From positions 310,001-374,000 of the forward strand of contig NIVC01000759.1 in the NCBI GenBank assembly GCA_002269645.1: DNA of 64,000 bases. The letters run 5' to 3'. Origin of the DNA: Macrostomum lignano. Lineage: Eukaryota. Within the stretch, counting starts at the first letter, position 1; the number at the start of each line of letters is the position of its first letter. The translations under genes and the position numbers were made by a program. The notes beneath the pieces are model-generated. The model ran no database searches and was not told the origin of the DNA. It worked only from the letters and a program-made list of their open reading frames with translations. This document shows, piece by piece, positions 26,364 to 60,382 of the stretch.

Positions 26364-26364
<1 letters not shown>

Positions 26365-26447: not shown

Positions 26448-27195
<748 letters not shown>

Positions 27196-35382: not shown

Positions 35383-35404
35383 TTTTTTTCACATAAAAAA
35401 ATAT

Positions 35405-36691: not shown

Positions 36692-36721
36692 TTTTTAACT
36701 AAAAATAAAATAAAATAAGAA

Positions 36722-37010
36722 ATGAAGCGGAAAAGTACACAGCAGATATCTGAATTGGAGAAGCTAGCACAAGCAGAGAAACGAGTTACCGGGCTAATAA
36801 ATAAGGAGCAACAATCCTACAATGAGTTTGTCCAAGCAGCCACAGAGTTTCATAAACCCGGGTATGGAGAAGCTAAGAAAAATATTGATCAGGTCAAAGA
36901 AACTATCGACGACATACAGGAAACCCAAGTGCAAAAGGTTTTGGGCAAAATTCCAGAAGCACCACAGATACAGCCGCAACCACAACAACCACAACCACAT
37001 CAATCACATC
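36722..37010 (+). pseudogene. Divergently oriented viral ORF interrupted by PLE insertion
   Basis: A-rich start context; sequence turns into the PLE GIY-YIG (opposite strand) at about 37010. Confidence 0.45.
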
Positions 37011-38722
37011 AGTCATCCCTACATAGAAGATTTTCCCAGGGTGGCACTGGTTGCAGGAGATGCCATAGATGATGTTCTTGGAGCCACAGGACAGGCTCTG
37101 AGAGATTAAAAAACCGGAAGCCGGTTTCAGTCCCTGGGCGGAGAGAGCAGGCGGTGAGTGGGTGCAGCATTTGCAGCGGGATGACCTACAGGGATGGAAC
37201 CCTTTGGGAAGCAGACCCAGATTGGTCGTTGGTCCCGCAGTCCAGTTCATGAGTTTGATGACCTCCTTTTTGCAGTTTCTAAGAAAAATCTTCGAGTAGC
37301 CTAATTGCTTGAGTTCCGATTTTAAAGAATTGAAAGCATCGTTGAAAGACTTGTAGTCATCACAGATACGAGCGTACCGAAGGACTTGGGATTTTACTAC
37401 CCCCTTGAAGGTGTGTGACGGATGGAAGGACTGTCGGTGCAACAATCTATGAGTGTCTGTTTCTTTTGAAAACAGTTGTGCTGTGAAGCGGTTTTCAGCT
37501 TTCCTGATGGTCATGTCAAGGAAACTGACCTCAGTTGATGAGGAGCTGACGGTGAGTTTGATGTTGGGGTTGATTGAATTTAGGTGTACAACAAATTCTG
37601 TCAGAGTTTCAGCCGGGTGGTCCCAGTGAATGAAGATATCATCTATGTACCTAAAATAGATGTTCGGCTTATAAAGAGCAGTTCTCAGGGCAGTTTCCTC
37701 CCAGAGGCTCATGAAGAGACAGGCATAGCTGGGCGCAAATATGCGCCCCATGGCTGTACCTCTAAGTTGTAGGAAAAGCATTTTGTCAAATTCAAAGTCA
37801 TTCCTGTACAAACACAATTCCAGTAGCTTTATTAACTCAGCATCCGGTCTAATGGGATCCGGGTATCGGTTAAAGAATTCCTGGATCGCTGCAATGCCCT
37901 GGTCTATTGGGATCATGGAGTACAGACTCTGGACATCACAGGTTGCCAGAGTCGAACCTTCCGTGCAGCTTTTATCCATAAGGTGTGCCTTTAAGTCATA
38001 GGAGTCCTTAATGAAAGTGGGTTGCGCTTGGGCAATCGGTTTTAGAAAGAAGTCTATGTACTTTTCTGCCCCAATTGCTTCAGAACTACATCCGCTCACA
38101 ATAGGTCTGCCTGCTGGGACCCGAAAGGGGATCAGCCAGGTGGCCGGGTCCTTGTGAATTTTTGGGAGCAGGTAGAAATGCCGGGGACGGAAGTTCTCTC
38201 CGGGACAAAGAAATGCACACTGTTTCTTAGATATGAACTTTCTGTTACATAAATTGAGGAAGATCCCCCTAATAAGTTCCGCAGTCACGGGTTGCAATGG
38301 CTGGTCCAGCTGTTGATAGGCATCAGTGTCAAACAGTTGGTTGTAGGCTGCAAATTCGTAGTCCTTAGGGTGCATGATGACCACTGCGTTGCCTTTGTCC
38401 GCCTTTTTTATAAGGACGGAGCTGTTTCGCTTGAGCCTCTGAATCGCCCTGGTCTCTGGTGCCTCTAGGTTGCCTTTGATCTGTACCGTTGTCAAATTCT
38501 CTACCAGATTTTGGTTCTCAAGTACCAACAAGTTGCACTCATCCCTTCTAAGTCTGAGGGGAACCTCCTTCCCTGATTTCCCGGTGAAGGGGGGCGGGCT
38601 GGTATTGGCGAGACCCCTCTTTTTGAAAAAGTCTTTCCAGAAAAGTTTACGATGAAATTCCGTCATGCAGTTCCTCAACTCATCGAAATCAAGGGCTTGG
38701 GTTGGGATAAAATTGAGTCCCT

Positions 38723-38810
<88 letters not shown>

Positions 38811-38861
38811 GGCGCCTCCAATCTCAGGCACGGACGCGGTACATGTAAAAAGGACAAACAA
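37010..38861 (-). mobile_element. Penelope-like element 1: RT ORF with truncated GIY-YIG
   Basis: KGLNFIPT, KADKGNAVV, FYLLPKIHK, DVQSLYS, GTAMG, YFRYIDDIF; GIY-YIG stops at IIYGISC...FYVGMT; (CT)n tract near the ORF start. Confidence 0.92.
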
Positions 38862-38877
38862 GTCAAGTTGATTTAAG

Positions 38878-38918
38878 TTGCCGATATTTCGAATTAGGTA
38901 AATTCTTCGTCAGGGCAA
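38878..38918 (-). ncRNA. Minimal type I hammerhead ribozyme upstream of the PLE-1 ORF
   Basis: UUGCC CUGACGA a GAAUU-uaccu-AAUUC GAA AUAU C GGCAA; intact core. Confidence 0.85.
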
Positions 38919-39494
38919 GTGAAAAGTAGCGACAAGTGGTGTTGTAAAAGTTATTAAATAGGCGGGTTAGAGGGGAGAGAGAGTAGACAGGTAGATTGAG
39001 AGATACGGTATGTACACTTGGTGTGAGTCGATAAAACACTATTAGAGTTGAAAATGCAAAATAAAAAACAGTGCACAAATAAAGTGAACCGCACGTGGGC
39101 TGCAGCGATCCTACACACGAAATAAATAATGGAATAGTGCGACTGCACCGGTGTCTGAAAAAGGGGAAAGAGTGACTCTAAGCACTTTACAAAATTGACC
39201 TCAATAAATAAAAAAGGTGAAAAGGCCCTCAAAAACTAAAAAGAGCAATTGTACGATAAGCAAAAGAGTAAAAGTAAAAAGTGTAATAAAAAGTACAGGG
39301 TGTCAAGAAACAATAGAAATGTTGATGCAGAATAAATGCTGAGAATATACAAAAGCTGTGCTTGGGCTAGCGATGAGAATAAAAAAAATTCTAAGAAAGG
39401 AGCAATAAAAGGCTTGGTAGGTACCGGCACGGTCTGACAAAGGTAAGTAGTAGGGAAAGTGAAGTAAAAAATCAAAAGGAAAAAATAAAAAAAT

Positions 39495-41137
39495 TCAATC
39501 AGTGGTGGACTCCAGTCGACTGGGACAGAGCAGCTGCCAGAGGTTCCGCCCTTTGGTGTAGGCGGGCAGCACCGGGGCCTCGCAGCACCGGGCCACGCGG
39601 TCCTTCACCGCGGCCACCAGGGCGTCCGACCTCGCACAATGGGGCAGGATCAGCGGGATGGCCGGGTTGTGCAGCGTGCCGGCAAGCTCGTTGACGCCGT
39701 GCGGGGTTTGAGTCTTTAACACCTCGATGAGCTTGGCCTCGTGGCGCTGCCGCCGCTCGTTCGCTCTGGGTCCCGTGCCGTCACGAGACCAGATGCCGGT
39801 GAAGGCGAAGTCCGCCAGACTGTGGCCATCACTGGTGAAATGGCGGGCCACCGGAGTGTCACGGGCGTGCCGGATATCGCCGATGTGCGCCAGCATGCGG
39901 CCGCGGATGCTGTTGGCGGTCTCGCCTACGTAGACCGTGTGGTCGCACCGGCGGCAGAACACGGCATAGACGGCGTTGGTGGCGTTGCAGTCGATCCGCT
40001 GACTGATGATGAGCTGGACTGTCGTGGCTCTGATCCGGGTCAGACAGAGGCGAACCTGGCGTGCGCCTGGCAGCACCTGCACAGCCGGGTCGGGTTGCAC
40101 GGCAGAAAGCCGAATTCCCACCGTCTCGTCGGGTAGAAGCCCAGCTCCGTCAGCATCTCGTACTTGATCGTGCGCAGGAACCGCCGATTGTAGCCCTGGT
40201 GTTGCACCAGACTTGAAAACAGCCCGGTGCACGCTGCGTCGAAATCGGCCATCAGGGAACACCGCCGGGCGTATCTGAGGAGCTGGGACTTCACCACGCC
40301 CCGGAACGTCCGCTTCGGGTGGAAAGAGTCGCGGTGAATGAGCGTTCGGCTGTCGGTCGGCTTAAAAATACACCTTAGTTGCCAGGCGCTTAACGTCACC
40401 CTCGCGGTCCCAGAAGACGGTGGTATCCAGGAAGTTGACCTCGGTGCTGCTGTAGCTCAGCTGCAACCTGATGTTCGGGTCGAGGCCATCCAGGAGCTCG
40501 TGGAAGCGGACCAGCTCGTCTCTCGTTCCGTGCCAGACGCCGAAGATGTCGTCGATGTAGCGCAGCCACAGGGCGGGCTTCTGCGGGCTGAGCTCCAGGC
40601 CCCGCTGCTCCCAGTAGCCCATGTAGATGTTACTGTAGCTGGGTGCAAACGATTTTCCCATGGCCGTGCCTTTCACTTGCAGAAAAAATTTGCCATCGAA
40701 CTCGAAGTCGTTGCGCTCCAGGTTCAGCTTGAGCAAACTGAGGAGGCTCGCGTCCGGGCGCCGGGCGTCCGGGTGCTCTCTGAAGGCCCTCTGTACGCAC
40801 TCGAGTCCGGCCGCGGTCGGGATGTTGGTGTAAAGGCTGGCGACGTCCATGGTGAACAGGAAGGTCTCACCCCGCGCCGGGCAGGTGATGTCTCTGATGG
40901 CCGCCTGGAAATGATCGGTATCCCTGATGAAGCTGGGCAGCTGGATGACGATCGGCTGCAGGAAGCTGTCGATGAAGCGGCCGCTGGCATATGATTCGCT
41001 GTCCACGTCAGACACGATGGGCCGGCCTGGCGGGATGTCGCCGAGCGGCCACGACTCGGCAGGCTTGTGAATCTTTGGCAGGATGTAAAAGCGTCGCGTC
41101 CGGAACTCCTCCTTCGGGCAGAAGGCGGTGAACTGGC
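39495..41137 (-). mobile_element. Penelope-like element 2: GC-rich RT + complete GIY-YIG, frameshifted
   Basis: FYILPKIHK, MDVASLYTNI, GTAMG, LRYIDDIF, VYAVFC...VYVGET...RM.AH...EAKLI...HGVN spread over several frames. Confidence 0.9.
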
Positions 41138-41297
41138 GTTGTCAAATTCTCTACCAGTTTTTGGTTCTCAAGCACAAACAAGTTGCACCCATCCCTTCTA
41201 AGTCTGCGGGGAACCTCCTTCACTGATTTCCCGGTGAAAGGGAGCGGGCTGGTATTGGCAAGACCCCTCTTTTTGAAAAAGGAAAAAGTCTTTCTCT

Positions 41298-41304: not shown

Positions 41305-41395
<91 letters not shown>

Positions 41396-41890
41396 GGTGA
41401 GAGACAGAGAGAGAGAGAGAGGAGAGAAGGAGAGAGGCAGAAGGAGAGAGGAGAGAAGGAGAGAGACAGAGAGAGAGAGGAGAGAAGGAGAGAGGCAGAA
41501 GGAGAGAGGAGAGAAGGAGAGAGACAGAGAGAGAGAGGAGAGAAGGAGAGAGGCAGAAGGAGAGAGGAGAGAAGGAGAGAGACAGAGAGAGAGAGGAGAG
41601 AAGGAGAGAGACAGAGAGAGAGGAGAGAAGGAGAGAGGCAGAGAGAGAGGAGAGAAGGAGAGAGACAGAGAGAGAGAGGAGAGAAGGAGAGAGGCAGAAG
41701 GAGAGAGGAGAGAAGGAGAGAGACAGAGAGAGAGAGAGAGGAGAGAAGGAGAGAGGCAGAAGGAGAGAGGAGAGAAGGAGAGAGGCAGAAGGAGAGAGGA
41801 GAGAAGGAGAGAGACAGAGAGAGAGAGGAGAGAAGGAGAGAGGCAGAAAGAGAGAGGAGAGAAGGAGGGAGACAGGGAGAGAGAAAAAGA
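41298..41890. repeat. (GA)n-derived compound purine repeat
   Basis: gagaggagagaaggagagag(g/a)caga units following a pure (GA)n run. Confidence 0.95.
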
Positions 41891-42685
41891 GACAAAAGCG
41901 TCTCGCACTGCTTCCATGCTTGAGTTGAGCTGCAATCGAGTCGCATAGGCAGCCACTGCGACTTAGCCCTGGCCTGTTTAGATGCCTTTTTATCATTGTT
42001 GCCTCTGCTGCAGCCAGCGAGAGAAGATGCTCAGCCCTTCACCCCGCACCGAATCTCTGAGCACAGCCGCACCCTGTGCTCTCAAGCCGCAATTTTCTCT
42101 CTGCGCCTCCCTCCCTAGACTCGAACCCGTTTTCATTTCGGCGGTCTCTGGGTGGCGCTGGCAGCATCCATGTTTCTAAGAAAACAGCTCTCCGTTTTTG
42201 TTGGTAGCGACGGCAGAATCTGCTCTAATTTGTGTATTTGGAGTTGGTCTTGCGTTGAGAATGAGACTTGTAATTGGAATTGGAAATGTACCTTAGGCAC
42301 ACTGAGCAGATGAAAAACTTGAATAGATGCGGTAGCAACACTGCATAATATTTACCATCAGCTAAAAATCGAAAGGTAGATTAAAAAATCAAAAGTCAAG
42401 TGAACATAGGGGTCAAAGTTATGGTAGTCACTAGGGGTCACTGGGGGTCAGTCATCAGGAAGCAGGCAGAGTCAAGTGAGCATCAAGTAGTCACTGGGGG
42501 TCAGTTATGAGAGAGTAGGCAGAGTCAAGTAAGCATCAAGTAGTCACTGGGGGTCACAGTTATGAGAGAGTAGGCAGAGTCAAGTAAGCATCAAGTAGTC
42601 AACATCAAACGACAAGAACTTAACAAGTGACTAATAAGCATCAAATATAACATGACAGACTTCACTCTGATTCTGCAACATGTTT

Positions 42686-43159
42686 TCAACGAGAACCCAA
42701 GCTGAACAGCTGCAGACTCCGTGAGCGCTTCTGAGCTTTGCTCGGATCAAAGGAGACCTGCCGAGCGAGCTGTGACACGGTCTGAGCAACGCAATAGTAC
42801 TTTATAATTTCGCCTCTCTCATTTCTGAACTCGTACGGCTTCTCCGCCATGTGCCGCCTCACGAGAATCATGATGTCCTCCAGGTGCTTCTCCGTGTAAA
42901 ATTGCTCGATGTAGTCGCACAGGGTCTGCACGAAGACGCTGCCAGTCTGAGGGTCGCGGTAGGACACCTGACCCTCTGTGGTAGGGAAGCAGAACAGGAA
43001 GTCACTCTCTGGCGGGTACAGGGCCGGGTTCTGCGCGAACTCTGGGGGCAGCTGGTCTGATAGCGGCCCCCTGTGCGTCACTTCGCCTTTGCCTGTGCCG
43101 CGGCAGGCCTGGACAAAGAAGAGCTTCGGCTTGCCCGCCAGGTCGGGGCAGACGGAGGC
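42686..43159 (-). CDS. Caspase last exon (catalytic Cys and p10)
   Basis: GKPKLFFVQACRG, DFLFCFPTTEGQVSYRDPQTGSVFVQTLC; acceptor ctccag at 43161-43160, phase 0. Confidence 0.93.
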   Translation of the reverse strand, partial: ASVCPDLAGKPKLFFVQACRGTGKGEVTHRGPLSDQLPPEFAQNPALYPPESDFLFCFPTTEGQVSYRDPQTGSVFVQTLCDYIEQFYTEKHLEDIMILVRRHMAEKPYEFRNERGEIIKYYCVAQTVSQLARQVSFDPSKAQKRSRSLQLFSLGSR

Positions 43160-43245
43160 CTGGAGGAGGGTTGGGAAATGTGTAGAAATTTGTAGAGCTG
43201 CAATGCTTTGTATCATATGCACAGATGAGCCAGACCCAGACCCAC

Positions 43246-43603
43246 CTTGAACTTGGCTGCGAGCTCCAGAACCGGACTCTGCACTCCATGGCCATCGATA
43301 ATGCAGTCCCTTCCCTGTGCGTCCTTGCGGCCGTGGGCCATCAGGAAGCAGACAAAACTGCCGTGCTTGGCGAGCTCCTTGGACTTCTTTGTCTCATTGA
43401 GGAAGTCATCGATCTCTGCAGTTGTGGGATTTTGCTTCTCCATGATGGTGAAACTCAGCTTCCTGAAAAGCTTCCTCACTCGGTCCACATCCCGCTCCGA
43501 GCCTTTGCGCTCCTCTTCGCCGCTGCCAGTTGAGTACGCGTTGATGTTGATGATGAGGCAGAATCCCTGCGGGTTCGTCACCTGGTAGAAATCCTCATGG
43601 AGT
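43246..43603 (-). CDS. Caspase p20 exon (catalytic His)
   Basis: PQGFCLIINI...RKGSERDVDRVRKLFRKLSF...FVCFLMAHG; acceptor ttccag at 43605-43604, donor GTGGGT at 43245. Confidence 0.92.
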
Positions 43604-43998
43604 CTGGAATGCAGCAGGGTGATCGGGGTGTGAAGCAAAGAGTGCAGAACAAGAATCTCCGGAGACCTTTGCCTGATTCTGTGGGAAGTTTTGCCCGAGA
43701 ATGCTATGGGATGCCGTGGAATGCTGTGGGCACACTGTATTATATATATTCTCTTCCTTACTAAACCTAACTGATCATTGTTATATCTCTGAAGAAAATA
43801 AAAATTAAGAAAAAATCGAAGCAAATCATATTCTATGAGCGTAGCATGCAGCCCACAAAAAAGCTTTGACTTCATTTAAAAATCTTTTTTTTTCTTCAAA
43901 ATTTAATGCAATTAATTAGCTCGTAAATCCAGCATTCAATTTTTAATGTCACTGTAAGAGACGTGCCAATATATCCGCTTTTTTCATACAAAACTTAC

Positions 43999-46900
43999 GG
44001 AACTGTCGGCGTCTTCTCAGACTGGGACCTCTGCTGGTGCCGCCGCTCAGCGATCCACCGCGTCAACTGAGACCCGTGCCGAGAGTTCAGCTTTGCGTAG
44101 TCAGCAACAGACTTTCGCTTCCATGGAAGAAAGTGCGAGGCATCCCTTAGATCAAGGACAGAGACATCCAGTAAGTCAACGATGAAGCTGAGCGTTTCGA
44201 CATCTTGATATTGAGCAGCCACATGAGCCGCTGTAATCCCGTTAAAACTTCTGTTCAAAAGACATGACCGGCCGAGTTGCTGAACGAGCCACTTAAGACA
44301 GGAGTTAGTAGCTTCATTCTCAGCGGCACAGTGAATGACAGTGCGTTGTAAGTAGCCAGGCTGATGGAAGCAGTCGGATCCGAGGACTGATTTGAAGAAC
44401 TGCATGGAATCGGCGTCCTGCTTCCAAGCAGCGAGATGGACGGGAGTGTTTTCTTGTTGGTCTCGAACGGAGAGACAGTCGGTTCCGCACTCGTTCACCA
44501 GCCACTTGAGACAGGAGTTAGTAGCTTCATTCGTAGCGGCACAGTGAATGGCAGTGCGTTGTAGGTAGCCAGGCTGATGGAAGCAGTCGGATCCGAGGAC
44601 TGATTTGAAGAACTGCATGGAATCGGCGTCCTGCTTCCAAGCAGCGAGATGGACGGGAGTGTTTTCTTGTTGGTCTCGAACGGAGAGACAGTCGGTTCCG
44701 CACTCGTTCACCAGCCACTTGAGACAGGAGTTAGTAGCTTCATTTAAAGCGGCCCGGTGAATGGCAGTGCGTTGTAAGTAGCCAGGCTGATGGAAGCAGT
44801 TGGATCCGAGGACTGATTTGAAGAACTGCATGGAATCGGCGCCCTGCTTCCAAGCAGCGAGATGGACGGGGGTGTTTCCTTGTTGGTCTCGAACGGAGAG
44901 ACAGTCGGTTCCGAACTCGTTCACCAGCCACTTGAGACAGGAGTTAGTAGCTTCATTCGTAGCGGCCCAGTGAATGGCAGTGCGTTGTAAGTAGCCAGGC
45001 TGATGGAAGCAGTCGGATCCGAGGACTGATTTGAAGAACTGCATGGAATCGGCGTCCTGCTTCCAAGCAGCGAGATGGACGGGAGTGTCTCCTTGTTGGT
45101 CTCGAACGGAGAGACAGTCGGTTCCGAACTCGTTCACCAGCCACTTGAGACAGGAGTTAGTAGCTTCATTCGTAGCGGCCCAGTGAATGGCAGTGCGTTG
45201 TAAGTAGCCAGGCTGATTGAAGCAGTCGGATCCGAGGACTGATTTGAAGAACTGCATGGAATCGGCGTCCTGCTTCCAAGCAGCGAGATGGACGGGAGTG
45301 TTTTCTTGTTGGTCTCGAACGGAGAGACAGTCGGTTCCGCACTCGTTCACCAGCCACTTGAGACAGGAGTTAGTCTTCTTTCTCATAGCGGCTTGGTGAA
45401 TGGCAGTGCGTTGGCAATTGCCAGGCTGATGGAAGCAGTCGGATCCGAGGACTGATTTGAAGAACTGCATGGAATCGGCGCCCTGCTTCCAAGCAGCGAG
45501 ATGGACGGGAGTGTTTCCTTGTTGGTCTCGAACGGAGAGACAGTCGGTTCCGCACTCGTTGACCAGCCACTTGAGACAGGAGTTAGTCTTCTTATTCATA
45601 GCGGCTTGGTGAATGGCAGTGCGTTGGAGTCGGCCAGGCTGATGGAAGCAGTCGGATCCGAGGACTGATTTGAAGAACTGCATGGAATCGGCGCCCTGCT
45701 TCCAAGCAGCGAGATGGACGGGAGTGTCTCCTTGTTGGTCTCGAACGGAGAGACAGTCGGTTCCGCACTCGTTCACCAGCCACTTGAGACAGGAGTTAGT
45801 AGCTTCATTTAAAGCGGCCCGGTGAATGGCAGTGCGTTGTAAGTAGCCAGGCTGATGGAAGCAGTCGGATCCGAGGACTGATTTGAAGAACTGCATGGAA
45901 TCGGCGCCCTGCTTCCAAGCAGCGAGATGGACGGGAGTGTTTCCTTGTTGGTCTCGAACGGAGAGACAGTCGGTTCCGCACTCGTTCACCAGCCACTTGA
46001 GACAGGAGTTAGTAGCTTCATTCGTAGCGGCACAGTGAATGGCAGTGCGTTGTAGGTAGCCAGGCTGATGGAAGCAGTCGGATCCGAGGACTGATTTGAA
46101 GAACTGCATGGAATCGGCGTCCTGCTTCCAAGCAGCGAGATGGACGGGAGTGTTTTCTTGTTGGTCTCGAACGGAGAGACAGTCGGTTCCGCACTCGTTC
46201 ACCAGCCACTTGAGACAGGAGTTAGTCTTCTTATTCATAGCGGCTTGGTGAATGGCAGTGCGTTGGAGTCGGCCAGGCTGATGGAAGCAGTCGGATCCGA
46301 GGACTGATTTGAAGAACTGCATGCAATCGGCGCCCTGCTTCCAAGCAGCGAGATGGACGGGAGTGTTTCCTTGTTGGTCTCGAACGGAGAGACAGTCGGT
46401 TCCGCACTCGTTGACCAGCCACTTGAGACAGGAGTTAGTCTTCTTATTCATAGCGGCTTGGTGAATGGCAGTGCGTTGGAGTCGGCCAGGCTGATGGAAG
46501 CAGTCGGATCCGAGGACTGATTTGAAGAACTGCATGGAATCGGCGCCCTGCTTCCAAGCAGCGAGATGGACGGGAGTGTCTCCTTGTTGGTCTCGAACGG
46601 AGAGACAGTCGGTTCCGCACTCGTTCACCAGCCACTTGAGACAGGAGTTAGTAGCTTCATTTAAAGCGGCCCGGTGAATGGCAGTGCGTTGTAAGTAGCC
46701 AGGCTGATGGAAGCAGTTGGATCCGAGGACTGATTTGAAGAACTGCATGGAATCGGCGTCCTGCTTCCAAGCAGCGAGATGGACGGGAGTGTTTCCTTGT
46801 TGGTCTCGAACGGAGAGACAGTCGGTTCCGCACTCGTTCACCAGCCACTTGAGACAGGAGTTAGTAGCTTCATTTAAAGCGGCCCGGTGAATGGCAGTGC

Positions 46901-48966
46901 GTTGTAAGTAGCCAGGCTGATGGAAGCAGTTGGATCCGAGGACTGATTTGAAGAACTGCATGGAATCGGCGTCCTGCTTCCAAGCAGCGAGATGGACGGG
47001 AGTGTTTCCTTGTTGGTCTCGAACGGAGAGACAGTCGGTTCCGCACTCGTTCACCAGCCACTTGAGACAGGAGTTAGTAGCTTCATTCGTAACGGCCCAG
47101 TGAATGGCAGTGCGTTGTAAGTAGCCAGGCTGATGGAAGCAGTCGGATCCGAGGACTGATTTGAAGAACTGCATGGAATCGGCGTCCTGCTTCCAAGCAG
47201 CGAGATGGACGGGAGTGTTTTCTTGTTGGTCTCGAACGGAGAGACAGTCGGTTCCGCACTCGTTCACCAGCCACTTGAGACAGGAGTTAGTCTTCTCATT
47301 CATAGCGGCTTGGTGAATGGCAGTGCGTTGGAGTCGGCCAGGCTGATGGAAGCAGTCGGATCCGAGGACTGATTTGAAGAACTGCATGGAATCGGCGCCC
47401 TGCTTCCAAGCAGCGAGATGGACGGGAGTGTCTCCTTGTTGGTCTCGAACGGAGAGACAGTCGGTTCCGCACTCGTTCACCAGCCACTTGAGACAGGAGT
47501 TAGTAGCTTCATTTAAAGCGGCCCGGTGAATGGCAGTGCGTTGTAAGTAGCCAGGCTGATGGAAGCAGTTGGATCCGAGGACTGATTTGAAGAACTGCAT
47601 GGAATCGGCGTCCTGCTTCCAAGCAGCGAGATGGACGGGAGTGTTTCCTTGTTGGTCTCGAACGGAGAGACAGTCGGTTCCGAACTCGTTCACCAGCCAC
47701 TTGAGACAGGAGTTAGTAGCTTCATTCGTAGCGGCCCAGTGAATGGCAGTGCGTTGTAAGTAGCCAGGCTGATGGAAGCAGTCGGATCCGAGGACTGATT
47801 TGAAGAACTGCATGGAATCGGCGTCCTGCTTCCAAGCAGCGAGATGGACGGGAGTGTTTTCTTGTTGGTCTCGAACGGAGAGACAGTCGGTTCCGAACTC
47901 GTTCACCAGCCACTTGAGACAGGAGTTAGTAGCTTCATTCGTAGCGGCCCAGTGAATGGCAGTGCGTTGTAAGTAGCCAGGCTGATGGAAGCAGTCGGAT
48001 CCGAGGACTGATTTGAAGAACTGCATGGAATCGGCGTCCTGCTTCCAAGCAGCGAGATGGACGGGAGTGTTTTCTTGTTGGTCTCGAACGGAGAGACAGT
48101 CGGTTCCGCACTCGTTGACCAGCCACTTGAGACAGGAGTTAGTCTTCTTATTCATAGCGGCTTGGTGAATGGCAGTGCGTTGGCAATTGCCAGGCTGATG
48201 GAAGCAGTCGGATCCGAGGACTGATTTGAAGAACTGCATGGAATCGGCGCCCTGCTTCCAAGCAGCGAGATGGACGGGAGTGTTTCCTTGTTGGTCTCGA
48301 ACGGAGAGACAGTCGGTTCCGCACTCGTTGACCAGCCACTTGAGACAGGAGTTAGTCTTCTTATTCATAGCGGCTTGGTGAATGGCAGTGCGTTGGAGTC
48401 GGCCAGGCTGATGGAAGCAGTCGGATCCGAGGACTGATTTGAAGAACTGCATGGAATCGGCGCCCTGCTTCCAAGCAGCGAGATGGACGGGAGTGTCTCC
48501 TTGTTGGTCTCGAACGGAGAGACAGTCGGTTCCGCACTCGTTCACCAGCCACTTGAGACAGGAGTTAGTAGCTTCATTTAAAGCGGCCCGGTGAATGGCA
48601 GTGCGTTGTAAGTAGCCAGGCTGATGGAAGCAGTCGGATCCGAGGACTGATTTGAAGAACTGCATGGAATCGGCGCCCTGCTTCCAAGCAGCGAGATGGA
48701 CGGGAGTGTTTCCTTGTTGGTCTCGAACGGAGAGACAGTCGGTTCCGCACTCGTTCACCAGCCACTTGAGACAGGAGTTAGTCACCTTATTCATAGCGGC
48801 TTGGTGAATGGCAGTGCGTTGGAGTCGGCCAGGCTGATGGAAGCAGTCGGATCCGAGGACTGATTTGAAGAACTGCATGGAATCGGCTCGATCTGCTCGC
48901 ACTGCGAAAGCAATGCTCCTGTAAGATGTCTGATGGCATGTGCGCAAGTGTATGTACATTTGCTCG
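43999..48966 (-). CDS. Ankyrin-repeat exon (22 x 71-aa double-ankyrin units plus cap) of an ankyrin-caspase
   Basis: 213-bp tandem units encoding QRTAIHxAAxN and xxTPVHLAAWKQ; open for about 5 kb; donor GTAAGT at 43998 (phase 2) splices in frame to the caspase exon (CC|A). Confidence 0.88.
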
Positions 48967-49585
48967 CTGTACAATGCAAGCGTGTCAGAATATAAGCGAG
49001 TGCTTTGGCGGCAGTCAAGTGTCGGTCTAAGCCTTAAGCCACTTTCTCGTCTCGGCTTATTCTATGACTAAAGGTTCTTCCACACCGCCATCAAATGAAG
49101 CCAATTTTGAAGTGATCACACTAAATTTGAGTTGATGATTAACGAATCCTTGACAATCACCTCAGTTTTTCACGCCATCAACTGACTTTTTACGAGTGAT
49201 CGCAAGCGGTCACACTGCAATCAACCGACTGATACTGAGGAGAATGACTGCCCTGTGGATAATTGGGACGTTTCTTCGGCAGCATTTTTTGCTGGAAACG
49301 GACTAAAGCAGACAGAAATTCTGTGGTCTCCGCAGTGCTAGAGGAAACTGCTTAATTCGGCAGTTTCGTCACGCTAAATGTGCGGAAACGAAGAAAGAAA
49401 CGAATTAAAATATTAAGTCGTTTCCTACGCAGTTTTCAACCAAAGGATCGTCCTTTTTCCTGTTATTTCGATTGTCAGGGTGCCGAAGGTCGTATAGAAC
49501 AGGATTTTCTTGCACCTTCTTTACCAGGGGTTTCAGTGGCAACCAACGGGCGCTGTTTTTTCACGCTTGCTCATTTCGCTTATGT

Positions 49586-50329: not shown

Positions 50330-51370
50330 CTAGTCTTGTCAACATGTTTTAGCGGCCGCCTCAATACCAGCTGGACAGGACTTTGGGCGTTGGCTGGCCA
50401 GATTCAACAATTTCGCATCTTCCAGTGGATCAGCGCAAGAATGTGCTGCTATCATTCCTCGACGATAAATCATATCAAGCGGCCAGCAATTTGGATGCTG
50501 CCCTGTCCCAGAACGGCTTTGAGAAGGCTCTGAAAAATCGATTTCGGCCATCGACATCATCTGCTGAGCTGCAGGCGCAGTTCTTCAATCTGACTCAAAA
50601 GGACGGTCAGTCGGTTGCAGACTATTCCGATGCTCTGATTGTTGCGGCAAAGCGCGCTTTCCCGAGTTGATGGAGACGAAAGCAGGAGACGTCAGTGACA
50701 GCGAAGGACGAGCTGCTCTAAGGTCGGTTTCTATCCGGATTGAGGGACCCAGTTGTGCAAATGCAGATGCAGATGCAGATGCAGCCAAAGGCGAAATTCG
50801 CTGATGCGGTGGAAACAGCGCGATTCGTGGAATCTATTCAGTCGCAAGGAGCCGCCGCTACGGATCTAGCTGCTGAGGTTCCCGAAGCCTTTGCATTCGA
50901 AATTCAACGGTCTCTGCAGGAGCTGTCCAACAAGCTCAATCGCTGGGAGACAAAGGACCAGGATCATTGTGAGAGTGGCGACAGACGCAGAGTTGTGACA
51001 TGCTGGAAGTGCGGTAGGCCGGGCCATGTTCAAAGATTTTGCACTCAGAAATCAGGAAACTTCGGTGGAGCGGCGACCGCCGGGGTGCCGTTCCGCAAGT
51101 GAAAATCTCAGTGCACCCAGTGGTGGAGGTGTCCTGCTCAGCCACTGGTGCTAACGTGCTGGTGAACTGTAGCATCCTGCCAATGTGTTTCCCTTCGGAG
51201 TCCCGCAGTCGGTGCACACCGACCAGGCTCGGAACTGGGAGTCGCAGCTGTTTCAAGAGACGATGCGGCTGCTGAAAATCGACAAGACTCGGACGACAGG
51301 CTACCACCCTGAAGGAGACGGCGGTTGCGAATGGATGAACCGGACGCTGGTGCAACTGTTGCGAGCATGA
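50330..51370 (+). pseudogene. Ty3/Gypsy remnant: gag with zinc knuckle fused to an integrase-core fragment
   Basis: FFNLTQKDGQSVADYSDAL, CWKCGRPGHVQRFC (CX2CX4HX4C), then GVPQSVHTDQ...TTGYHPEGDG.CE.MNRTL; RT/RNase H missing. Confidence 0.8.
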
Positions 51371-51734
51371 GTAAACGAGAATCAGCGAGACTCGGATCTT
51401 TATGTGCAGATTGCACTGATGGGCCACCGCACTTCAGTCCACAAGTCTATTGGTCAGACACCTTCGGGGATGCATTTCGGCCGAAAACTGCGCGGCGCGC
51501 ATGCAACACAGCCAGTCCAGCTGCAGCACCTCAATTGCAACCAGCGGCGCAACTGCACAATACTGACGAGGACAGCCTGAGCTTTGACGGCGCCCCAGTC
51601 GGCGCCCCAGTCGGCGCCCCAGTCTTTTTGGTGAAGCGTATACTAATTAAATCCAGTTTTTGTTATTTCTTTTTTGAAACAGTCAAGTGTCGGTCTACGC
51701 CTTAAGCCACTTTCTCGTCTCGGCTTATTCTTAC

Positions 51735-51778
51735 ACTGCTGTGGAAGGCAACATCCGACGCAACTCTCGACCATCCAT
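51735..51778 (-). CDS. Putative first coding exon of the ankyrin-caspase (MDGRELRRMLPSTA-V)
   Basis: ATG at 51778, donor GTAAGA at 51734, phase 2 matching the acceptor tacag|C at 48967; inferred, no transcript evidence. Confidence 0.4.
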
Positions 51779-52522
51779 CAGAAAGCTCGCCACAGAGCAC
51801 GAATTGGCCGGCAACAATGTCCATGCAAGTAGTAGGAGTTAGCAGAACACGGCCGCAGGAAATTCCGTGGAAATTCCGTCACTGGTTTATGTACTGGAGA
51901 GATGGCTCCTAGAGCCCTGATCGCCTAAAACTTACAAGCCTTCGCTGAGTAGCAGGTATGGGGGAAGGATGAGCATTGCAACTACATGTATAGGATTTCA
52001 TGTAAGCATAAAGCAGCGGTAGGAGCAGAAAACGAGAAGCGCGTATGAATAAAATAAATAGTGGGTGCTGTGCGTATACTGTGCATGTATATGGCTGTGT
52101 CTGACTTTTGAGATGGTATAGAAATGCAACTGTTTTTTAATCATTTATGCATAGTAGAAGATACTGAAATTATAATAGGCTCGTATGCTTTTAAAAATTT
52201 GCCAATTCGCAGGCTTTGTTTGCTTACTCTTTCGGCCTGGAGCTTCTTTTTGTAAAAAATGCGAACTATCGCTGTGTAGTGTGTGAACACAGCGCCTATG
52301 TAAATGCGTTGGTGCACTCTGTCGCAGTGAAAGCCACTGAAATTGGGTGGAGCCGCTGCTGTTTTATGTTTGTAATATGCATGCTTGAATTGAAATCAGC
52401 CCAGAACTGTGCCTGCAGTGTGAAGTGCTGTGCATCTGGAGTGGGGGAGGCTAATGTATACTGGCCAACCCTTTCCTAGCATTCACCCACCCTCCGGCAC
52501 CCACCCCACTCCGCCATGAGGA

Positions 52523-52530
52523 TATAAAAG
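52523..52530 (+). promoter_or_regulatory. Canonical TATA box upstream of the PC4-like gene
   Basis: TATAAAAG about 70 nt before ATG 52599, preceded by C-rich boxes. Confidence 0.55.
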
Positions 52531-52598
52531 GGCCAGCTTTGAAAAGCATTTTTAAGATCATACTTCACTTTTTAATCTCTGAAGACTTCACGTGAATC

Positions 52599-53337
52599 AT
52601 GGACAGCGGCGAAGGCTACAAGGTACAGGTGCAGGAATTTGAAGGGCAAAAATTCATCGCCATTAGGAAGCACCAGCGCCAGCCTCAAGCCTGGAGTTCC
52701 CGGCTTCAATCTGAATACGCATCAGTGGGCGAAACTGAAGGAGGTAAAACGCTCGCTCGTGAAGGCCGCTCTAAGCGGTGAAACCAAGGTTGTGAAATTG
52801 GGCTTTGACAAGTTTATTGAGGTCAAACAAGGAACAATTTGGTTGAAGCGACTGCCCGAGGACTGTTGCGAGGAGTTTCTGAGACGCAACACAGTGCCTC
52901 TGTCTCCGCTCTTGTGGCAAAAACTGTGGCACGCTTCCGGTTGATTTGACAAGCAGCTGGCAGAGCTCTCTCAAAGCATGCGAATGAACTATGAGCTGAG
53001 CTCATCTGACGACGATGAAGAGGTCACCGTGAAGCTTCCCATCAAGACTGAACCGAATGAGGGTGAAGAAGAGGCCCGCTCACCAACAGAGCTGACGATC
53101 GCTACTGAGCCGGTGACTTCAACGCCTCTGCCCCGAGCTGGCGCTGGGAACATCCCGTCAGAGGACACAAACTTGCAAGAAGATCCAGTATGGTATCAAT
53201 TCCGGGCTCATGCGGCTGCGGTGAACAACAGCAGAAAGCGCAAGCAACCGTGGGCTCTGCGCAGGCAGAATGCGGTCAAGAGGCCGAGGTGGATACCCCG
53301 TGACGAGCTGCCGAACTCGGACGAAGATGATGAGTGA
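52599..53337 (+). pseudogene. PC4/Sub1-like ssDNA-binding protein (possibly two PC4 domains) with acidic tail
   Basis: YKVQVQEFEGQKFIAIRKH + LKPGVPGFNLNTHQWAKLKE matches PC4 VSVRDFKGKVLIDIREY...[20 protein letters not shown]; one frameshift near 52675 and an in-frame TGA at 52942. Confidence 0.75.
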
Positions 53338-53716
53338 ACTTGTTTTTAAATGACAGCGATAGTTCGCATTTTGTATTTCTTTGATTACCATGCGCATATA
53401 AAAATTATAATAATCGAGAAAAAATTGTGGTAAAAAATCAAAATTTATTCAGCAGTTCGCGTGACTTCATTTTCAACAATTTGACTAACAACTTGATTTC
53501 ATTTAAACTTTACTCAGTTTCCTTTTGTTTTGTCTGTAACTGTTCTGAATCGAATCACTGAAGTAAATGTTCACTGTGTTGTGCTCCGCTGAATGCTTGC
53601 TTTAGCGTATAATATGTTACTGCATGTAAAATACACTGTTGTTCTATCAAACTTTATTCGTCGCAGGCCCTTAAGCATTTAAGAAAGAAAGCTGTCTCAG
53701 TTGATTTTTTTAGCAA

Positions 53717-54440
53717 ATGGAAAAGATATTCTTTAATCCCGAGCAGCCTGCCAGTTTTTCTGGTTGCAACAAACTTCTGAATGAGGCTCGAAAACAAGGT
53801 ATCAAAGTGGGAGAAAAATCTGTTAAGAATTGGCTTAACGAACAGGCAGTTTACACTTTACATAAGCCATAAATCCATAAGATGGAACCAAACTTTGAAG
53901 AATAAAATGTGGCGATACTTCACTCACAACAGCACTCTGCACTGGGTAGATGTGCTGCCAAAGTTAGTGAAGTCGTACAATGCTACTTTTCACAGAAGCA
54001 TCAGAATGGCACCAAGAAATGTTTGCAAGCAAAATGAGTCGGAAGTGTGGATGAACCTGTATGATGGCAAGGCAATAGAAACTTTGGATAAAGTCAGGAA
54101 ACCAAAGTTCAGTGAAAATCAAACTGTAAGAATTTCCAACCCACCCCGGCTATTCAAAAAAGGGTACAAAGCAAACTGGAGTGAGGAAGTGTACACTGTA
54201 GTTGCAAAAGCTCCGAAACATAATCCTTACATGTACAAGATCCGAGACATGAAGGGAGAAGAGATTCAAGGCCTCTTTCACGAGCACGAGCTGCAGGCGG
54301 TGCCGGACTCACAGCGACTATACGTGATTGAGAAAGTGTTGAAGACACAAAAGCAAAGAGGGAAAATTCGCTATCTTGTCAAGTGGGCCGGCTACGATTC
54401 GACAGGCTGGGTGGATGAAAAAGACTTAAGAAAGGTTTAG
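53717..54440 (+). pseudogene. Retroviral-type Polinton integrase with C-terminal chromodomain, catalytic core deleted
   Basis: MEKIFFNPEQPASFSG...WLNEQAVYTLHKP joins directly to WNQTLKNKMWRYFT...YN.TFHRSI; chromodomain YVIEKVL...YLVKWAGY. Confidence 0.88.
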
Positions 54441-54468: not shown

Positions 54469-55287
54469 ATGATTATAATGCGAACTATTTTGATTAACAG
54501 TGAGCATGCTGAAGGTACTCCTAGTGACTTTAATTTTTACCTGTCTTCACCTATTCACTTGGATCGAAATGTGGACCATGAGGCAGGTCTGGCTGAAATC
54601 CATCTGCCTGCTGCATGGTTCATTGTTGACGAGCCTTACTGCTTCACTGTCTCAGATGGAAGAGAGCATGAGGCCCTGGTTCTTCAACCCGGACGATTTG
54701 CTAGAGTGGAGGAGCTGGTAGAGCGCCTGAATGAGCTGCTGGCCAACTCTGATTCGCTGTTCTTTGATGCAATGAGTGACAGGGAGTCTGAGATGGAGGC
54801 CGATGAGTCCGGCCTGATGGGGCGTAGTGGCAACAGGGAATTCGGTATGAAGTTCGAAATCCGCAACTCACGAACTGTGGTGCACAACAACACTACGAGA
54901 GCAGAGCTGTTTCTCCCATCCAGCAAAATTCTGCATTGGCTGGGATTCGGAAACCAGGCTGTGAAAATCCAGCCAGGAAGCCGCGTGTCCGAGCATTGCA
55001 TTGGCTGCCCGCGCACCAGCTTAATCAATGTGCACTGCAGTATCGTTGAGTCAACTAATTGCAACTGGGGCTCCCTGTTGAGAACAGTCGGAGTGAACGG
55101 CAACATTCAATGTGGCAACTACCTGTCAAAAATATTTAAGAAAACAATATTCTTCCCGATTCAACGAATCAGTCTTCTTCACAGCATTCGAGTTCAGCTG
55201 AGGGACATCTATGGTTGCCTACTGATTGCACAGACTCACAGCCCTGTTCTGCTCACAGTTCAGATTCGAGAGAAACGCATTCAATGA
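54469..55287 (+). CDS. Minor capsid (penton) protein
   Basis: INS...PSDFNFYLSSPIHL...GLAEIHLP...INVHCSIVE...LLRTV...FFPI...SIRVQLRD; position between integrase and MCP. Confidence 0.75.
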   Translation: MIIMRTILINSEHAEGTPSDFNFYLSSPIHLDRNVDHEAGLAEIHLPAAWFIVDEPYCFTVSDGREHEALVLQPGRFARVEELVERLNELLANSDSLFFDAMSDRESEMEADESGLMGRSGNREFGMKFEIRNSRTVVHNNTTRAELFLPSSKILHWLGFGNQAVKIQPGSRVSEHCIGCPRTSLINVHCSIVESTNCNWGSLLRTVGVNGNIQCGNYLSKIFKKTIFFPIQRISLLHSIRVQLRDIYGCLLIAQTHSPVLLTVQIREKRIQ

Positions 55288-55659: not shown

Positions 55660-55661
55660 AC

Positions 55662-56945: not shown

Positions 56946-56950
56946 CTGGC

Positions 56951-57481: not shown

Positions 57482-57483
57482 AC

Positions 57484-58130: not shown

Positions 58131-58172
58131 GAAAGTGAAGCTTGTTTTTTATCGGCTATTGTTTTCATCGCT

Positions 58173-60377: not shown

Positions 60378-60382
<5 letters not shown>

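What the first reader, a model, noticed from the sequence alone, without database searches (positions are those of the whole stretch)
42686..48966. Ankyrin-array caspase whose repeats vary mainly at the predicted binding face: candidate diversified immune sensor-protease
Seen: 22 near-identical 213-bp units splice in frame to a caspase with catalytic His (AHG) and Cys (QACRG). Unit differences concentrate at a few codons and are mostly amino-acid changing: PG[Y/R/N][L/C]QRTAIH[R/Q/W/C]AA[L/M/T/E]N[E/K][A/K] and QQ[G/E][N/D]TPVHLAAWKQ[G/D]. Known: these hairpin and first-helix positions form the ankyrin concave binding surface, the ones randomised in DARPins; typical initiator caspases use CARD/DED prodomains instead. 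Inference: a receptor-caspase fusion that changes ligand specificity by repeat shuffling. It lies between two endogenous viruses, which may be chance.
Basis: partly seen in the sequence, partly recalled or inferred. Interest (0 to 1): 0.85.

Follow-up and report, generated by a model that had tools for sequence, protein, structure and literature searches.

The report
Flatworm caspase with hypervariable ankyrin array
This is a real gene of the flatworm Macrostomum lignano in which 22 near-identical double-ankyrin units, differing mainly at the residues ankyrin proteins use to grip their partners, are spliced to a cell-death protease. That design resembles fungal immune receptors, but this copy has lost the normal start of the gene and its function is untested.

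Summary
Window 44202-48887 (-) holds 22 in-frame 213-bp units (71 aa, two ankyrin repeats each) in one 1659-codon ORF. GT/AG splicing joins it in frame to two exons encoding a caspase with intact His, Cys and Asp-pocket residues.

The same two junctions appear in annotated Macrostomum lignano proteins of near-identical paralogs, so the fusion is probably real.

Variation is strongly clustered. Across 36-44 distinct units from six arrays, the hypervariable residues sit at ankyrin positions 2, 3, 5, 10, 13 and 14, the hairpin and inner-helix binding face. Their nonsynonymous rate is 3-6 times the scaffold's synonymous rate, while the scaffold is under purifying selection. Units are recombinant mosaics, and array length differs between copies (4, 5, at least 10, at least 11, and 22).

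- Ankyrin-prodomain caspases are already published for flatworms.
- This copy lacks the N-terminal cap and start codon that full-length paralogs have.
- Its caspase region evolves almost neutrally (dN/dS 0.64-1.0).

An immune role is untested. The neighbouring mobile elements look incidental.

Verdict: a new variant of a known kind. The closest analogy is the internally conserved, hypervariable repeats of fungal NLRs.

The parts
42686..48974 (-). Whole ANK-array caspase gene as modelled: three exons, 1935 codons counted from the opening of the reading frame, stop codon at 42686-42688.
   Evidence: The ORF list, the sequence and the joined exons translate without an internal stop. The window matches M. 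lignano paralog proteins at 92-96% identity.
48888..48974 (-). Leader of the open frame upstream of unit 1. The first in-frame ATG is at 48957-48959. There is no counterpart of the roughly 95-aa N-terminal cap of full-length paralogs.
   Evidence: Homology to the upstream region of the paralog (L001) stops near 48935. The 46 nt at 48888-48933 match nothing in the paralog loci. tblastn with the N-caps of P0091, P0097 and P0089 finds only weak ankyrin-to-ankyrin hits in the window, while the positive control on L002 and L003 works.
44202..48887 (-). Array of 22 units of 213 bp (71 aa, two ankyrin repeats each). There are 18 distinct unit sequences. Unit 22 (44202-44414) is a hybrid whose second half is the diverged terminal repeat.
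   Evidence: Shown, with Pfam Ank families. An AlphaFold2 model of units 19-22 plus the cap has pLDDT 93.5 and pTM 0.87. Foldseek's best matches are Espin, NOMPC and ankyrin-1 repeats and DARPins.
43999..44201 (-). C-terminal capping helices and linker ('VETLSF...TPTVP'), ending at the intron-1 donor CC|GTAAGT. The TAA stop of the unspliced frame overlaps that donor.
   Evidence: Sequence. The model shows helices after the last repeat. The junction 'TPTVP|LHEDFYQ' is identical in P0001, P0003, P0091 and P0100.
43604..43998 (-). Intron 1 (395 nt, GT...AG). The frame of exon 2 stays open for 91 codons inside it.
   Evidence: Shown. Intron length is 392-395 nt in five paralog copies.
43246..43603 (-). 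Exon 2, the first part of the caspase large subunit. It holds the S1-pocket Arg (43507-43509) and the catalytic His (43333-43335, in 'MAHG').
   Evidence: Pfam Peptidase_C14, the alignment to caspase-7 and the coordinates.
43160..43245 (-). Intron 2 (86 nt, GT...AG).
   Evidence: Shown. The junction 'AAKFK|ASVCP' is identical in the paralog proteins.
42686..43159 (-). Exon 3. It holds QACRG with the catalytic Cys (43103-43105), an inter-subunit linker with Asp ('PLSD|Q'), the small subunit with the second S1 Arg (42956-42958), and the stop codon.
   Evidence: Shown. P0094 (UniProt A0A1I8HID4) is 96% identical to exons 2-3 overall; it differs by one residue and a short linker segment with a 4-residue gap.
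42437..42601 (.). 53-54-bp tandem repeat (3.1 copies) just 3' of the gene. It is a landmark shared by the upstream tandem paralog ('gene 1') in two other contigs.
   Evidence: Shown.

Best explanation
The window holds one copy of a young, tandemly duplicated Macrostomum lignano family of ankyrin-prodomain caspases.

**What is shown**
- A long ankyrin solenoid is built from 71-aa double repeats with an almost invariant scaffold.
- Hypervariable residues sit at the hairpin and inner-helix positions (2, 3, 5, 10, 13, 14).
- The solenoid is followed by a capping helix, a linker of about 70 aa and a caspase domain with an intact catalytic dyad and Asp-binding pocket.
- In paralogs the parts are joined into one protein by two GT/AG introns.
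- Arrays change by recombination between units. They are mosaics, and array length varies from 4 to 22.
- The binding-face codons accumulate amino-acid changes several times faster than silent changes accumulate elsewhere.

**What is inferred**
- The array is a variable recognition surface standing where other initiator caspases carry CARD or DED.
- Binding of a multivalent or oligomeric partner would bring caspase domains together. They would then activate by proximity, cut themselves at the linker Asp and possibly at 'LHED|F' upstream of the large subunit, and trigger cell death or proteolytic signalling.
- This is a one-protein sensor-effector that works like the hypervariable-repeat NLRs of fungi, but without a NOD module.

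**This copy**
It is the expanded upstream member of the tandem pair (22 units, about 44 repeats). It has lost the N-terminal cap and normal start codon, so whether it still makes protein is open.
For: **Architecture and splice**
- The gene model rests.
- The same junctions occur in P0001, P0003, P0091 (788 aa, full length), P0100 and P0101.

**Species and family**
- The window is 92-96% identical to M. lignano proteins.
- Two tandem genes lie in contigs NIVC01000874.1 and NIVC01003147.1.

**Hypervariability**
- Eight positions have at least 4 residue types among 36 distinct units: B2, B3, B10, B13, A3, A5, A13 and A14. Seven of them fall on library-randomised positions (P = 7e-7).
- Using that a-priori position set on 44 distinct units from 6 arrays, the nonsynonymous rate is 3.0 times the synonymous rate of the other codons (P = 4e-6). 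Scaffold omega is 0.47 (P = 0.003).
- Using the post-hoc set, the ratio is 5.6 times and scaffold omega is 0.34.

**Structure**
- The AlphaFold2 model has pLDDT 93.5. Hypervariable codons lie in the turn before each inner helix, or within or at the end of it. None lies in the outer helices.
- Foldseek matches ankyrin solenoids.

**Shuffling**
- 51 of 171 site pairs show all four gametes.
- 7 x 5 half-unit haplotypes occur in 14 combinations.
- A 631-nt exact block is repeated 13 units away.
- Arrays have 4, 5, at least 10.1, at least 10.9 and 21.6 units.

**Prodomain**
No CARD, DED or NOD domain is found in the window's C-terminal 419 aa (last ankyrin unit, cap, linker and caspase) or its first 313 aa; the precomputed Pfam lists for paralogs also show only ankyrin families plus Peptidase_C14 and a few weak off-target matches.
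Against: - There is no transcript, protein or activity evidence for this copy. Its only public model (P0094) is a caspase-only fragment that begins inside intron 1.
- The N-terminal cap and ATG are absent.
- The cap-linker-caspase region has dN/dS 0.64-1.0 against five paralog copies, not clearly below 1.
- Within the window array alone, scaffold omega is 0.65 and not significant.
- Synonymous steps are also elevated inside the hypervariable codons (1.5-1.9 per site). A local mutational effect or path-counting artefact is therefore not fully excluded.
- The step counts are minimum-spanning lower bounds. They ignore recombination and possible errors in the older assembly.
- An immune or non-self role rests on analogy only.
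Confidence: 0.6

Rival explanations
1. This copy is a decaying by-product of an unstable locus. A partial duplicate lost its promoter-proximal region, start codon and N-terminal cap. Its array then ran away by unequal crossing-over and it now drifts. On this reading the hypervariable pattern is inherited from functional relatives and says nothing about this copy.
For: - The N-cap and ATG are missing, and a unique 46-nt junction stands in their place.
- dN/dS is 0.64-1.0 in the caspase region.
- Scaffold omega within this array is 0.65 and not significant. By my count from the table, changes seen in only one unit affect 5 codons with an amino-acid change and 1 silent codon, which is near the neutral ratio.
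- The array uses only a few unit types and lacks the A13/A14 diversity seen in paralogs.
- The upstream gene in the older assembly is annotated from an internal unit Met (P0100).
Against: - All 1935 codons remain open, with 0% indels over 4.7 kb. Both splice sites and every catalytic residue are intact.
- Divergence is so low (dS about 0.03-0.04) that neither decay nor constraint could yet show.
- Each unit carries an in-frame Met, and an ATG lies 24 codons upstream of unit 1, so translation is possible.
Confidence: 0.35
2. The family is functional but is not a pathogen or non-self sensor. On this reading the ankyrin prodomain recruits the caspase to endogenous partners, for example in germline, regeneration or reproductive tissues. 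Fast change at the binding face would then reflect co-evolution with fast-evolving self proteins, or subfunctionalisation among many paralogs.
For: - M. lignano carries a large caspase radiation with many different prodomains: non-repetitive ankyrin, kinase plus ankyrin, LRAT, and Ras/Roc. This suggests general modular rewiring of caspase recruitment rather than one immune system.
- Published ANK caspases are interpreted as initiators that bind an unknown activator (PMC11463336).
Against: - Near-identical repeats, length polymorphism and binding-face diversification together are, in the one well-studied precedent, a signature of non-self recognition receptors (PMC4986451).
- That paper also finds highly internally conserved repeats to be rare in metazoan proteins (0.8%).
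Confidence: 0.25
3. These are two products rather than a fusion: an ankyrin-only protein that ends at the TAA overlapping the donor, and a separate caspase made from transcripts that start inside intron 1.
For: - The stop codon sits exactly at the donor.
- The exon-2 frame is open for 77-91 codons inside intron 1 in all copies.
- Four UniProt fragments (P0002, P0093-P0095) begin with intron-encoded residues, including the one that matches this copy.
Against: - Six independent annotated proteins of paralogs cross the junction exactly as modelled. Two of them (P0001, P0096) are fragments that start in the last, unique unit and run through to the caspase C-terminus.
- The intronic open frame has no conserved start codon and is shifted by indels between copies, as non-coding sequence would be.
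- Both isoforms could coexist.
Confidence: 0.12
4. The length of the array (22 units) is an assembly artefact.
For: - Near-identical 213-bp units are hard to assemble.
- The older public assembly breaks here. One contig has an N-gap directly at the array's 5' edge, and another contig starts inside the array.
Against: - Those two independent contigs already hold at least 10.1 and at least 10.9 units, both lower bounds.
- 18 of the 22 units here are distinct, the frame is kept throughout with no indels, and the longest exact internal duplication is only 631 nt.
Confidence: 0.1

Closest known systems
Platyhelminth 'ANK caspases', first noted in Schistosoma and surveyed in PMC11463336 (Genome Biol Evol 2024)
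   Same: - An ankyrin-repeat prodomain stands in place of CARD or DED on a caspase.
- Taenia solium (P0273) and Cichlidogyrus (P0268) ANK+C14 proteins are among the best 150 of 5085 caspase matches, at 36-37% identity.
- In my tree they sit next to the Macrostomum radiation.
   Different: - The paper reports ANK caspases only in parasitic flatworms. For M. lignano it reports only a kinase-prodomain caspase, yet here a free-living species has several ANK-caspase subfamilies.
- Support for a common clade is weak (20% bootstrap).
- The published proteins are not described as arrays of near-identical, hypervariable units.
Fungal NLRs with highly internally conserved ANK, TPR or WD repeats (HET-E/HET-D/NWD family; Pa_3_8560), PMC4986451
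   Same: - Repeats are more than 85% identical to each other.
- Repeat number is polymorphic.
- Units are reshuffled within and between paralogs.
- Positive selection falls on a few positions that map to the concave ankyrin surface.
- The repeat domain is coupled to a cell-death effector.
   Different: - There is no NOD (NACHT or NB-ARC) module.
- The effector is a true caspase lying C-terminal to the repeats.
- The host is an animal.
- The repeating unit is a pair of ankyrin repeats.
Designed ankyrin repeat libraries (DARPins; ANK-N5C, PMC4308713)
   Same: - Both have an identical scaffold with diversity confined to hairpin and inner-helix positions 2, 3, 5, 10 and 13. Position 14 is added in DARPins; that detail is from my own knowledge of the original design.
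- HMMER aligns the units to DARPin chains in the same register.
   Different: This array is natural, far longer (about 44 repeats against 4-7) and alternates two repeat types. In this copy there is no N-terminal cap.
Caspase-8/-10 and caspase-3/-7
   Same: - The catalytic domain matches these best. The top PDB match is caspase-7 (E = 2e-32), and the best named non-flatworm database hits are DED caspases and caspase-3.
- The dyad and S1 pocket are conserved.
   Different: No death-fold prodomain is present. The activation platform is unknown.

Membership tests
Caspases (peptidase family C14A) | Caspase domain recognised above the curated threshold | tested here: met
   Pfam PF00656 scores 147 bits against a cutoff of 21.4, E = 9e-43.
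Caspases (peptidase family C14A) | Catalytic His (xHG) and Cys (QACxG), plus the Arg/Gln/Arg pocket for a P1 Asp | tested here: met
   All of these residues align with caspase-7.
Caspases (peptidase family C14A) | Asp-directed proteolytic activity | not testable with these tools
   Only sequence is available.
Platyhelminth ANK caspases | Ankyrin repeats and a caspase domain in one polypeptide | tested here: met
   For paralogs, annotated proteins carry both domains. For this copy the claim rests on an in-frame GT/AG splice model with identical junctions, so it is inferred.
Platyhelminth ANK caspases | Caspase domain groups with the parasitic-flatworm ANK caspases | tested here: inconclusive
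   The neighbour-joining tree places Taenia and Cichlidogyrus ANK caspases next to the Macrostomum radiation, but with only 20% bootstrap support.
Platyhelminth ANK caspases | Restricted to parasitic flatworms, as stated in PMC11463336 | tested here: not met
   The host is the free-living M. lignano. This widens the described distribution rather than excluding kinship.
NLR / STAND receptors with internally conserved repeats | Repeats more than 85% identical over at least 100 aa | tested here: met
   Units differ at 0-19 of 213 nt, so they are at least 91% identical.
NLR / STAND receptors with internally conserved repeats | Repeat-number variation between copies or alleles | tested here: met
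   Arrays have 4, 5, at least 10.1, at least 10.9 and 21.6 units in homologous copies. True allelic variation among individuals was not tested.
NLR / STAND receptors with internally conserved repeats | Diversifying selection at binding-surface positions | tested here: met
   Shown. The caveats are lower-bound step counts, recombination, and elevated silent change inside the same codons.
NLR / STAND receptors with internally conserved repeats | Central NOD (NACHT or NB-ARC) ATPase module | tested here: not met
   Only ankyrin families and Peptidase_C14 are found, in the window segments scanned and in the paralogs' precomputed Pfam lists. The gene works like these receptors but is not a member of the family.
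Initiator caspases with a death-fold prodomain | CARD or DED N-terminal to the caspase domain | tested here: not met
   There is no CARD or DED hit. In the model, the region between the array and the caspase is a capping helix plus linker.
Ankyrin-repeat fold | Stacked helix-turn-helix repeats forming a solenoid | tested here: met
   The AlphaFold2 model has pLDDT 93.5. Foldseek TM-scores to Espin ankyrin repeats are 0.68-0.73.

The most novel reading that the evidence does not exclude
A free-living flatworm may carry a germline-encoded, recombination-diversified ankyrin receptor fused directly to a caspase. This would be a single-protein sensor-executioner for pathogen or non-self recognition that arose independently of NLRs. 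Array length and unit order would differ between individuals and give each animal its own repertoire.
Probability: 0.2. Interest if true: 0.85.

Novelty: new variant of a known kind. Interest (0 to 1): 0.6.

Why it matters
Caspases are normally recruited through CARD or DED adaptors. Variable recognition in animal innate immunity is usually assigned to LRR, Ig or lectin domains.

A caspase whose own prodomain is a rapidly reshuffled, binding-face-diversified ankyrin array would be an animal counterpart of the fungal hypervariable-repeat receptors. It would link recognition to cell death in one protein and would be a tractable case in a laboratory flatworm.

The finding also corrects the published picture that ankyrin caspases are confined to parasitic flatworms. 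It further shows that an array the older assembly could not cross is about 22 units long.

Tried and rejected
**Searches and models that gave nothing useful**
- Searching the protein collection with the first three units returned only three distant ankyrin proteins and missed the obvious paralogs. The word index copes badly with this repeat. The paralogs came instead from cluster listing and a profile search.
- Single-sequence AlphaFold2 of the C-terminal 503 aa gave pLDDT 42, so I discarded it.
- A home-made ankyrin profile built from the units was too specific to detect ankyrin repeats in other caspases. I used Pfam instead.
- The whole-window direct-repeat search gave only redundant array families and microsatellites, and no clear long terminal repeats.
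- Papers were searched for five family gene identifiers (Mlig014209, Mlig020959, Mlig018347, Mlig032136, Mlig013715); none mentions them.

**Ideas considered and rejected**
- An N-terminal-cap exon further upstream in the window. None is present.
- A second tandem paralog in the window. None is present.
- A conserved coding alternative first exon inside intron 1. There is no conserved start, and indels shift the frame between copies.
- The raw nonsynonymous-to-synonymous ratio as evidence of selection. It is about the neutral value.

Full report
**1. What is there**

On the minus strand, Tandem Repeats Finder reports a 213-bp period with 21.6 copies, 95% matches and no indels at 44287-48887. 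The array lies in a single open frame, 43995-48974, of 1659 codons. In register it consists of 21 full 71-aa units plus a 22nd unit. The first half of unit 22 is a normal unit and its second half is a diverged terminal repeat. Pfam recognises ankyrin repeats throughout (Ank_2, E = 2e-31).

The frame ends at a TAA that overlaps a consensus donor (CC|GTAAGT). An acceptor 395 nt downstream restores the frame into an exon encoding the first part of a caspase. An 86-nt GT/AG intron then leads to the last exon. The joined exons give 1935 codons without a stop.

The C-terminal 276 aa match Pfam Peptidase_C14 (E = 9e-43) and caspase-7 structures (E = 2e-32). The AHG histidine, the QACRG cysteine and the Arg/Gln/Arg Asp-pocket residues are all aligned. 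No CARD, DED or NOD domain is present in the segments scanned.

**2. Whose gene it is, and whether the splice is real**

Protein searches place the window in Macrostomum lignano, a free-living flatworm. Annotated proteins of that species are 92-96% identical to it.

Six of them cross both modelled junctions exactly ('TPTVP|LHEDFYQ' and 'AAKFK|ASVCP'): P0001, P0096, P0003, P0091, P0100 and P0101. P0091 (PAA53038.1, 788 aa) is a complete protein. It has a Met start, a roughly 95-aa N-terminal cap, one diverged unit, about five units of the repeated type, the terminal repeat, the linker and the caspase domain.

P0001 and P0096 are fragments that begin in the last, unique unit and run to the caspase C-terminus. 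I cannot see from here whether these models rest on cDNA.

The only public model that matches this copy itself is P0094 (A0A1I8HID4). It is 96% identical to exons 2-3 overall, differing by one residue and a short linker segment with a 4-residue gap. It is a caspase-only fragment that begins with residues encoded by the end of intron 1. The fusion is therefore well supported for the family and inferred for this copy.

**3. The locus in other copies of the genome**

In the public assembly GCA_002269645.1, two contigs each carry two tandem genes of this kind.

- The downstream gene has 4 or 5 units and a normal N-terminus.
- The upstream gene is the one whose 3' part and whose 54-bp and GA-rich downstream repeats match the window best.
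- In one contig the upstream gene has at least 10.1 units, ending at a run of N directly at the array's 5' edge.
- In the other contig it has at least 10.9 units, and the contig begins inside the array.

The older assembly could therefore not cross this array. The window's 22 units are consistent with those lower bounds.

Upstream of the window's array the sequence matches the upstream region of the downstream-type gene at 96-97% identity, but only as far as about 48935. After that, 46 nt follow that match nothing in the paralog loci, and unit 1 starts. The roughly 650 nt that in paralogs hold the proximal upstream region, the ATG and the N-terminal cap are missing. No cap-like coding sequence exists anywhere in the window (with a working positive control). 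An in-frame ATG lies 24 codons before unit 1, and each unit has an in-frame Met. Translation is possible but would give an uncapped solenoid.

**4. The pattern of variation**

*Within the window.* 29 of 213 sites vary among units 1-21, and 18 of them lie in codons 21, 22, 29 and 32-35. Several of these codons differ at two or three positions. The overall nonsynonymous-to-synonymous site ratio is close to neutral expectation.

*Across the family.* Adding units from the paralog arrays makes the pattern general. Among 36 distinct internal units from seven proteins, eight positions show 4-8 residue types. They are positions 2, 3, 10 and 13 of the second repeat, and positions 3, 5, 13 and 14 of the first.

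*Register.* The register was fixed by HMMER alignment of the units to DARPin chains. A designed-ankyrin library paper names positions 2, 3, 5, 10 and 13 as its randomised, contiguous binding surface in the beta-turn and helix 1 (PMC4308713). Seven of my eight positions fall in that set (hypergeometric P = 7e-7).

*Selection tests.* Taking that published set as an a-priori partition, I counted minimum substitution steps over 44 distinct units from six arrays.
- The binding-face codons have a nonsynonymous rate 3.0 times the synonymous rate of the remaining codons (binomial P = 4e-6).
- The remaining codons have omega 0.47 (P = 0.003).
- With the post-hoc set the figures are 5.6 times and 0.34.

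*Structure.* An AlphaFold2 model of units 19-22 plus the cap, built with a 10-sequence alignment, is confident (pLDDT 93.5, pTM 0.87). The variable codons lie in the turn before each inner helix, or within or at the end of it. None lies in the outer helices. Foldseek finds ankyrin solenoids: Espin, NOMPC, ankyrin-1 and DARPins. The tools return no coordinates, so I could not compute surface exposure.

*Caveats.*
- The counts are lower bounds and ignore recombination.
- Silent steps are also raised inside the hypervariable codons.
- One source array comes from an error-prone assembly.

**5. Shuffling**

- Eighteen of the 22 units are distinct.
- The longest exact internal duplication is 631 nt at a distance of 13 units (units 2-4 against units 15-17).
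- 51 of 171 pairs of informative sites show all four gametes.
- The seven haplotypes of the second-repeat block and the five of the first-repeat block occur in 14 combinations.

This is what unequal, out-of-register exchange between units produces.

**6. Constraint on this copy**

The terminal repeat, linker and caspase domain differ from five paralog copies at dS 0.026-0.074, with dN/dS 0.64-1.0. That is weak constraint at best, although the counts are small (about 9 silent and 22 replacement differences).

Within the window's array the scaffold omega is 0.65 and not significant. By my count from the table, changes seen in only one unit affect 5 codons with an amino-acid change and 1 silent codon. 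The array also uses few unit types and lacks the diversity at positions A13 and A14 that paralogs show.

Taken with the missing N-terminus, a non-functional or recently disabled copy is a serious possibility (I give it about 0.35). It does not undo the family-level conclusion.

**7. Comparison with what is known**

*Ankyrin-prodomain caspases.* These are published. PMC11463336 describes 'ANK caspases' as a flatworm-specific clade, sister to DED caspases, first seen in Schistosoma and restricted to parasitic species. For M. lignano it reports only a kinase-prodomain caspase.

An exhaustive HMMER search with the window's caspase domain gave 5085 matches. Among the best 150 were:
- ANK+C14 proteins of Taenia solium and Cichlidogyrus casuarinus, at 36-37% identity;
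- further M. lignano ANK+C14, kinase+ANK+C14 and Ras/Roc+C14 proteins.

LRAT+C14 proteins appeared earlier.

A neighbour-joining tree gives these results:
- The array subfamily forms a clade with 100% support.
- All M. lignano long-prodomain caspases group together with 42% support.
- The parasitic ANK caspases sit beside them with 20% support.

That is consistent with common origin but not demonstrated.

*Closest functional analogy.* This is the fungal NLRs with highly internally conserved ANK, TPR or WD repeats. They show more than 85% internal identity, repeat-number polymorphism, reshuffling and positive selection on the concave surface. The same paper finds such repeats rare in metazoan proteins, at 0.8% (PMC4986451). 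This gene meets those features but has no NOD module, so it works like those receptors without being one.

I found no paper describing hypervariable near-identical ankyrin arrays on an animal caspase.

**8. Surroundings**

- On the low-coordinate side (about 34.5-41.2 kb, minus strand) lies a reverse-transcriptase-bearing remnant. Next to it is an ORF with a weak, sub-threshold double-jelly-roll-like match.
- On the high-coordinate side (about 50.4-54.4 kb, plus strand) there are gag, zinc-knuckle and chromodomain matches of a Ty3/gypsy-like remnant. Its first part is shared with the paralog locus.
- From about 55 kb to the window's end lies a Maverick/Polinton-like block. It has a protein-primed polymerase B with an endonuclease VII domain, a weak adenovirus-type protease match and a TBP-domain ORF.

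I did not analyse these elements further. Paralog copies have other neighbours, so the proximity looks incidental.

**9. Verdict**

The feature is real, and the observation and its structural reading hold. The fusion is probable. The architecture is known, but the hypervariable, recombining array on a caspase appears undescribed. The immune-sensor reading is a reasonable analogy without direct evidence, and this copy may be disabled.

I rate it a new variant of a known kind, with interest 0.6.

Noticed in passing
window about 55000-64000 (runs off the end): A Maverick/Polinton-like block. It contains a minus-strand ORF with protein-primed DNA polymerase B and endonuclease VII domains, with the polymerase similarity continuing in a second adjacent frame. 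It also has a weak adenovirus-type protease match and a plus-strand ORF with two TBP-domain matches.
   Followed up: partly
window about 34500-41200, minus strand: A retroelement remnant whose reverse-transcriptase similarity is split over two open frames. Next to it is an ORF with a weak double-jelly-roll-like match (PF21738, E = 1.7e-5, below the curated cutoff).
   Followed up: partly
window about 50380-54440, plus strand: Retrotransposon gag, CCHC zinc knuckle and chromodomain matches, suggesting a Ty3/gypsy-like remnant. No reverse transcriptase or integrase match was seen in the ORFs scanned. The first 1.3 kb is shared at 96% identity with the paralog locus L001 7133-8387.
   Followed up: partly
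M. lignano proteins P0014, P0103, P0108, P0141, P0156, P0195 (not in the window): The species has a large caspase radiation with unusual prodomains: LRAT, Ras/Roc, and protein kinase plus ankyrin. In my tree they all cluster with the ankyrin-array caspases.
   Followed up: partly
window 43604-43998 (intron 1) and the same intron in L001, L002, L004, L005: The frame of exon 2 stays open for 77-91 codons inside intron 1 in every copy, and four UniProt fragments start there. The ankyrin ORF's stop codon overlaps the donor, so unspliced RNA would encode an ankyrin-only protein.
   Followed up: yes
window 42437-42601; L001 1583-2734; L004 12647 onwards: A 53-55-bp tandem repeat directly follows the upstream-type gene. 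It has 3 copies here and 21 in the older assembly. A GA-rich 29-bp repeat lies next to it (41308-41892).
   Followed up: no
L004 8683-8835 and L005 position 1: The public assembly GCA_002269645.1 has a scaffold gap, or a contig end, exactly at the 5' edge of this array. It also has frame-breaking single-base differences inside the array, so its gene models there (P0099, P0100) are truncated.
   Followed up: yes
window 13028-15064, plus strand: A 678-aa ORF ends in an RNA-recognition motif (PF00076, E = 7e-9). Window 19035-31208 is collinear with the region downstream of the second tandem paralog in L001, yet no second paralog is present in the window.
   Followed up: no
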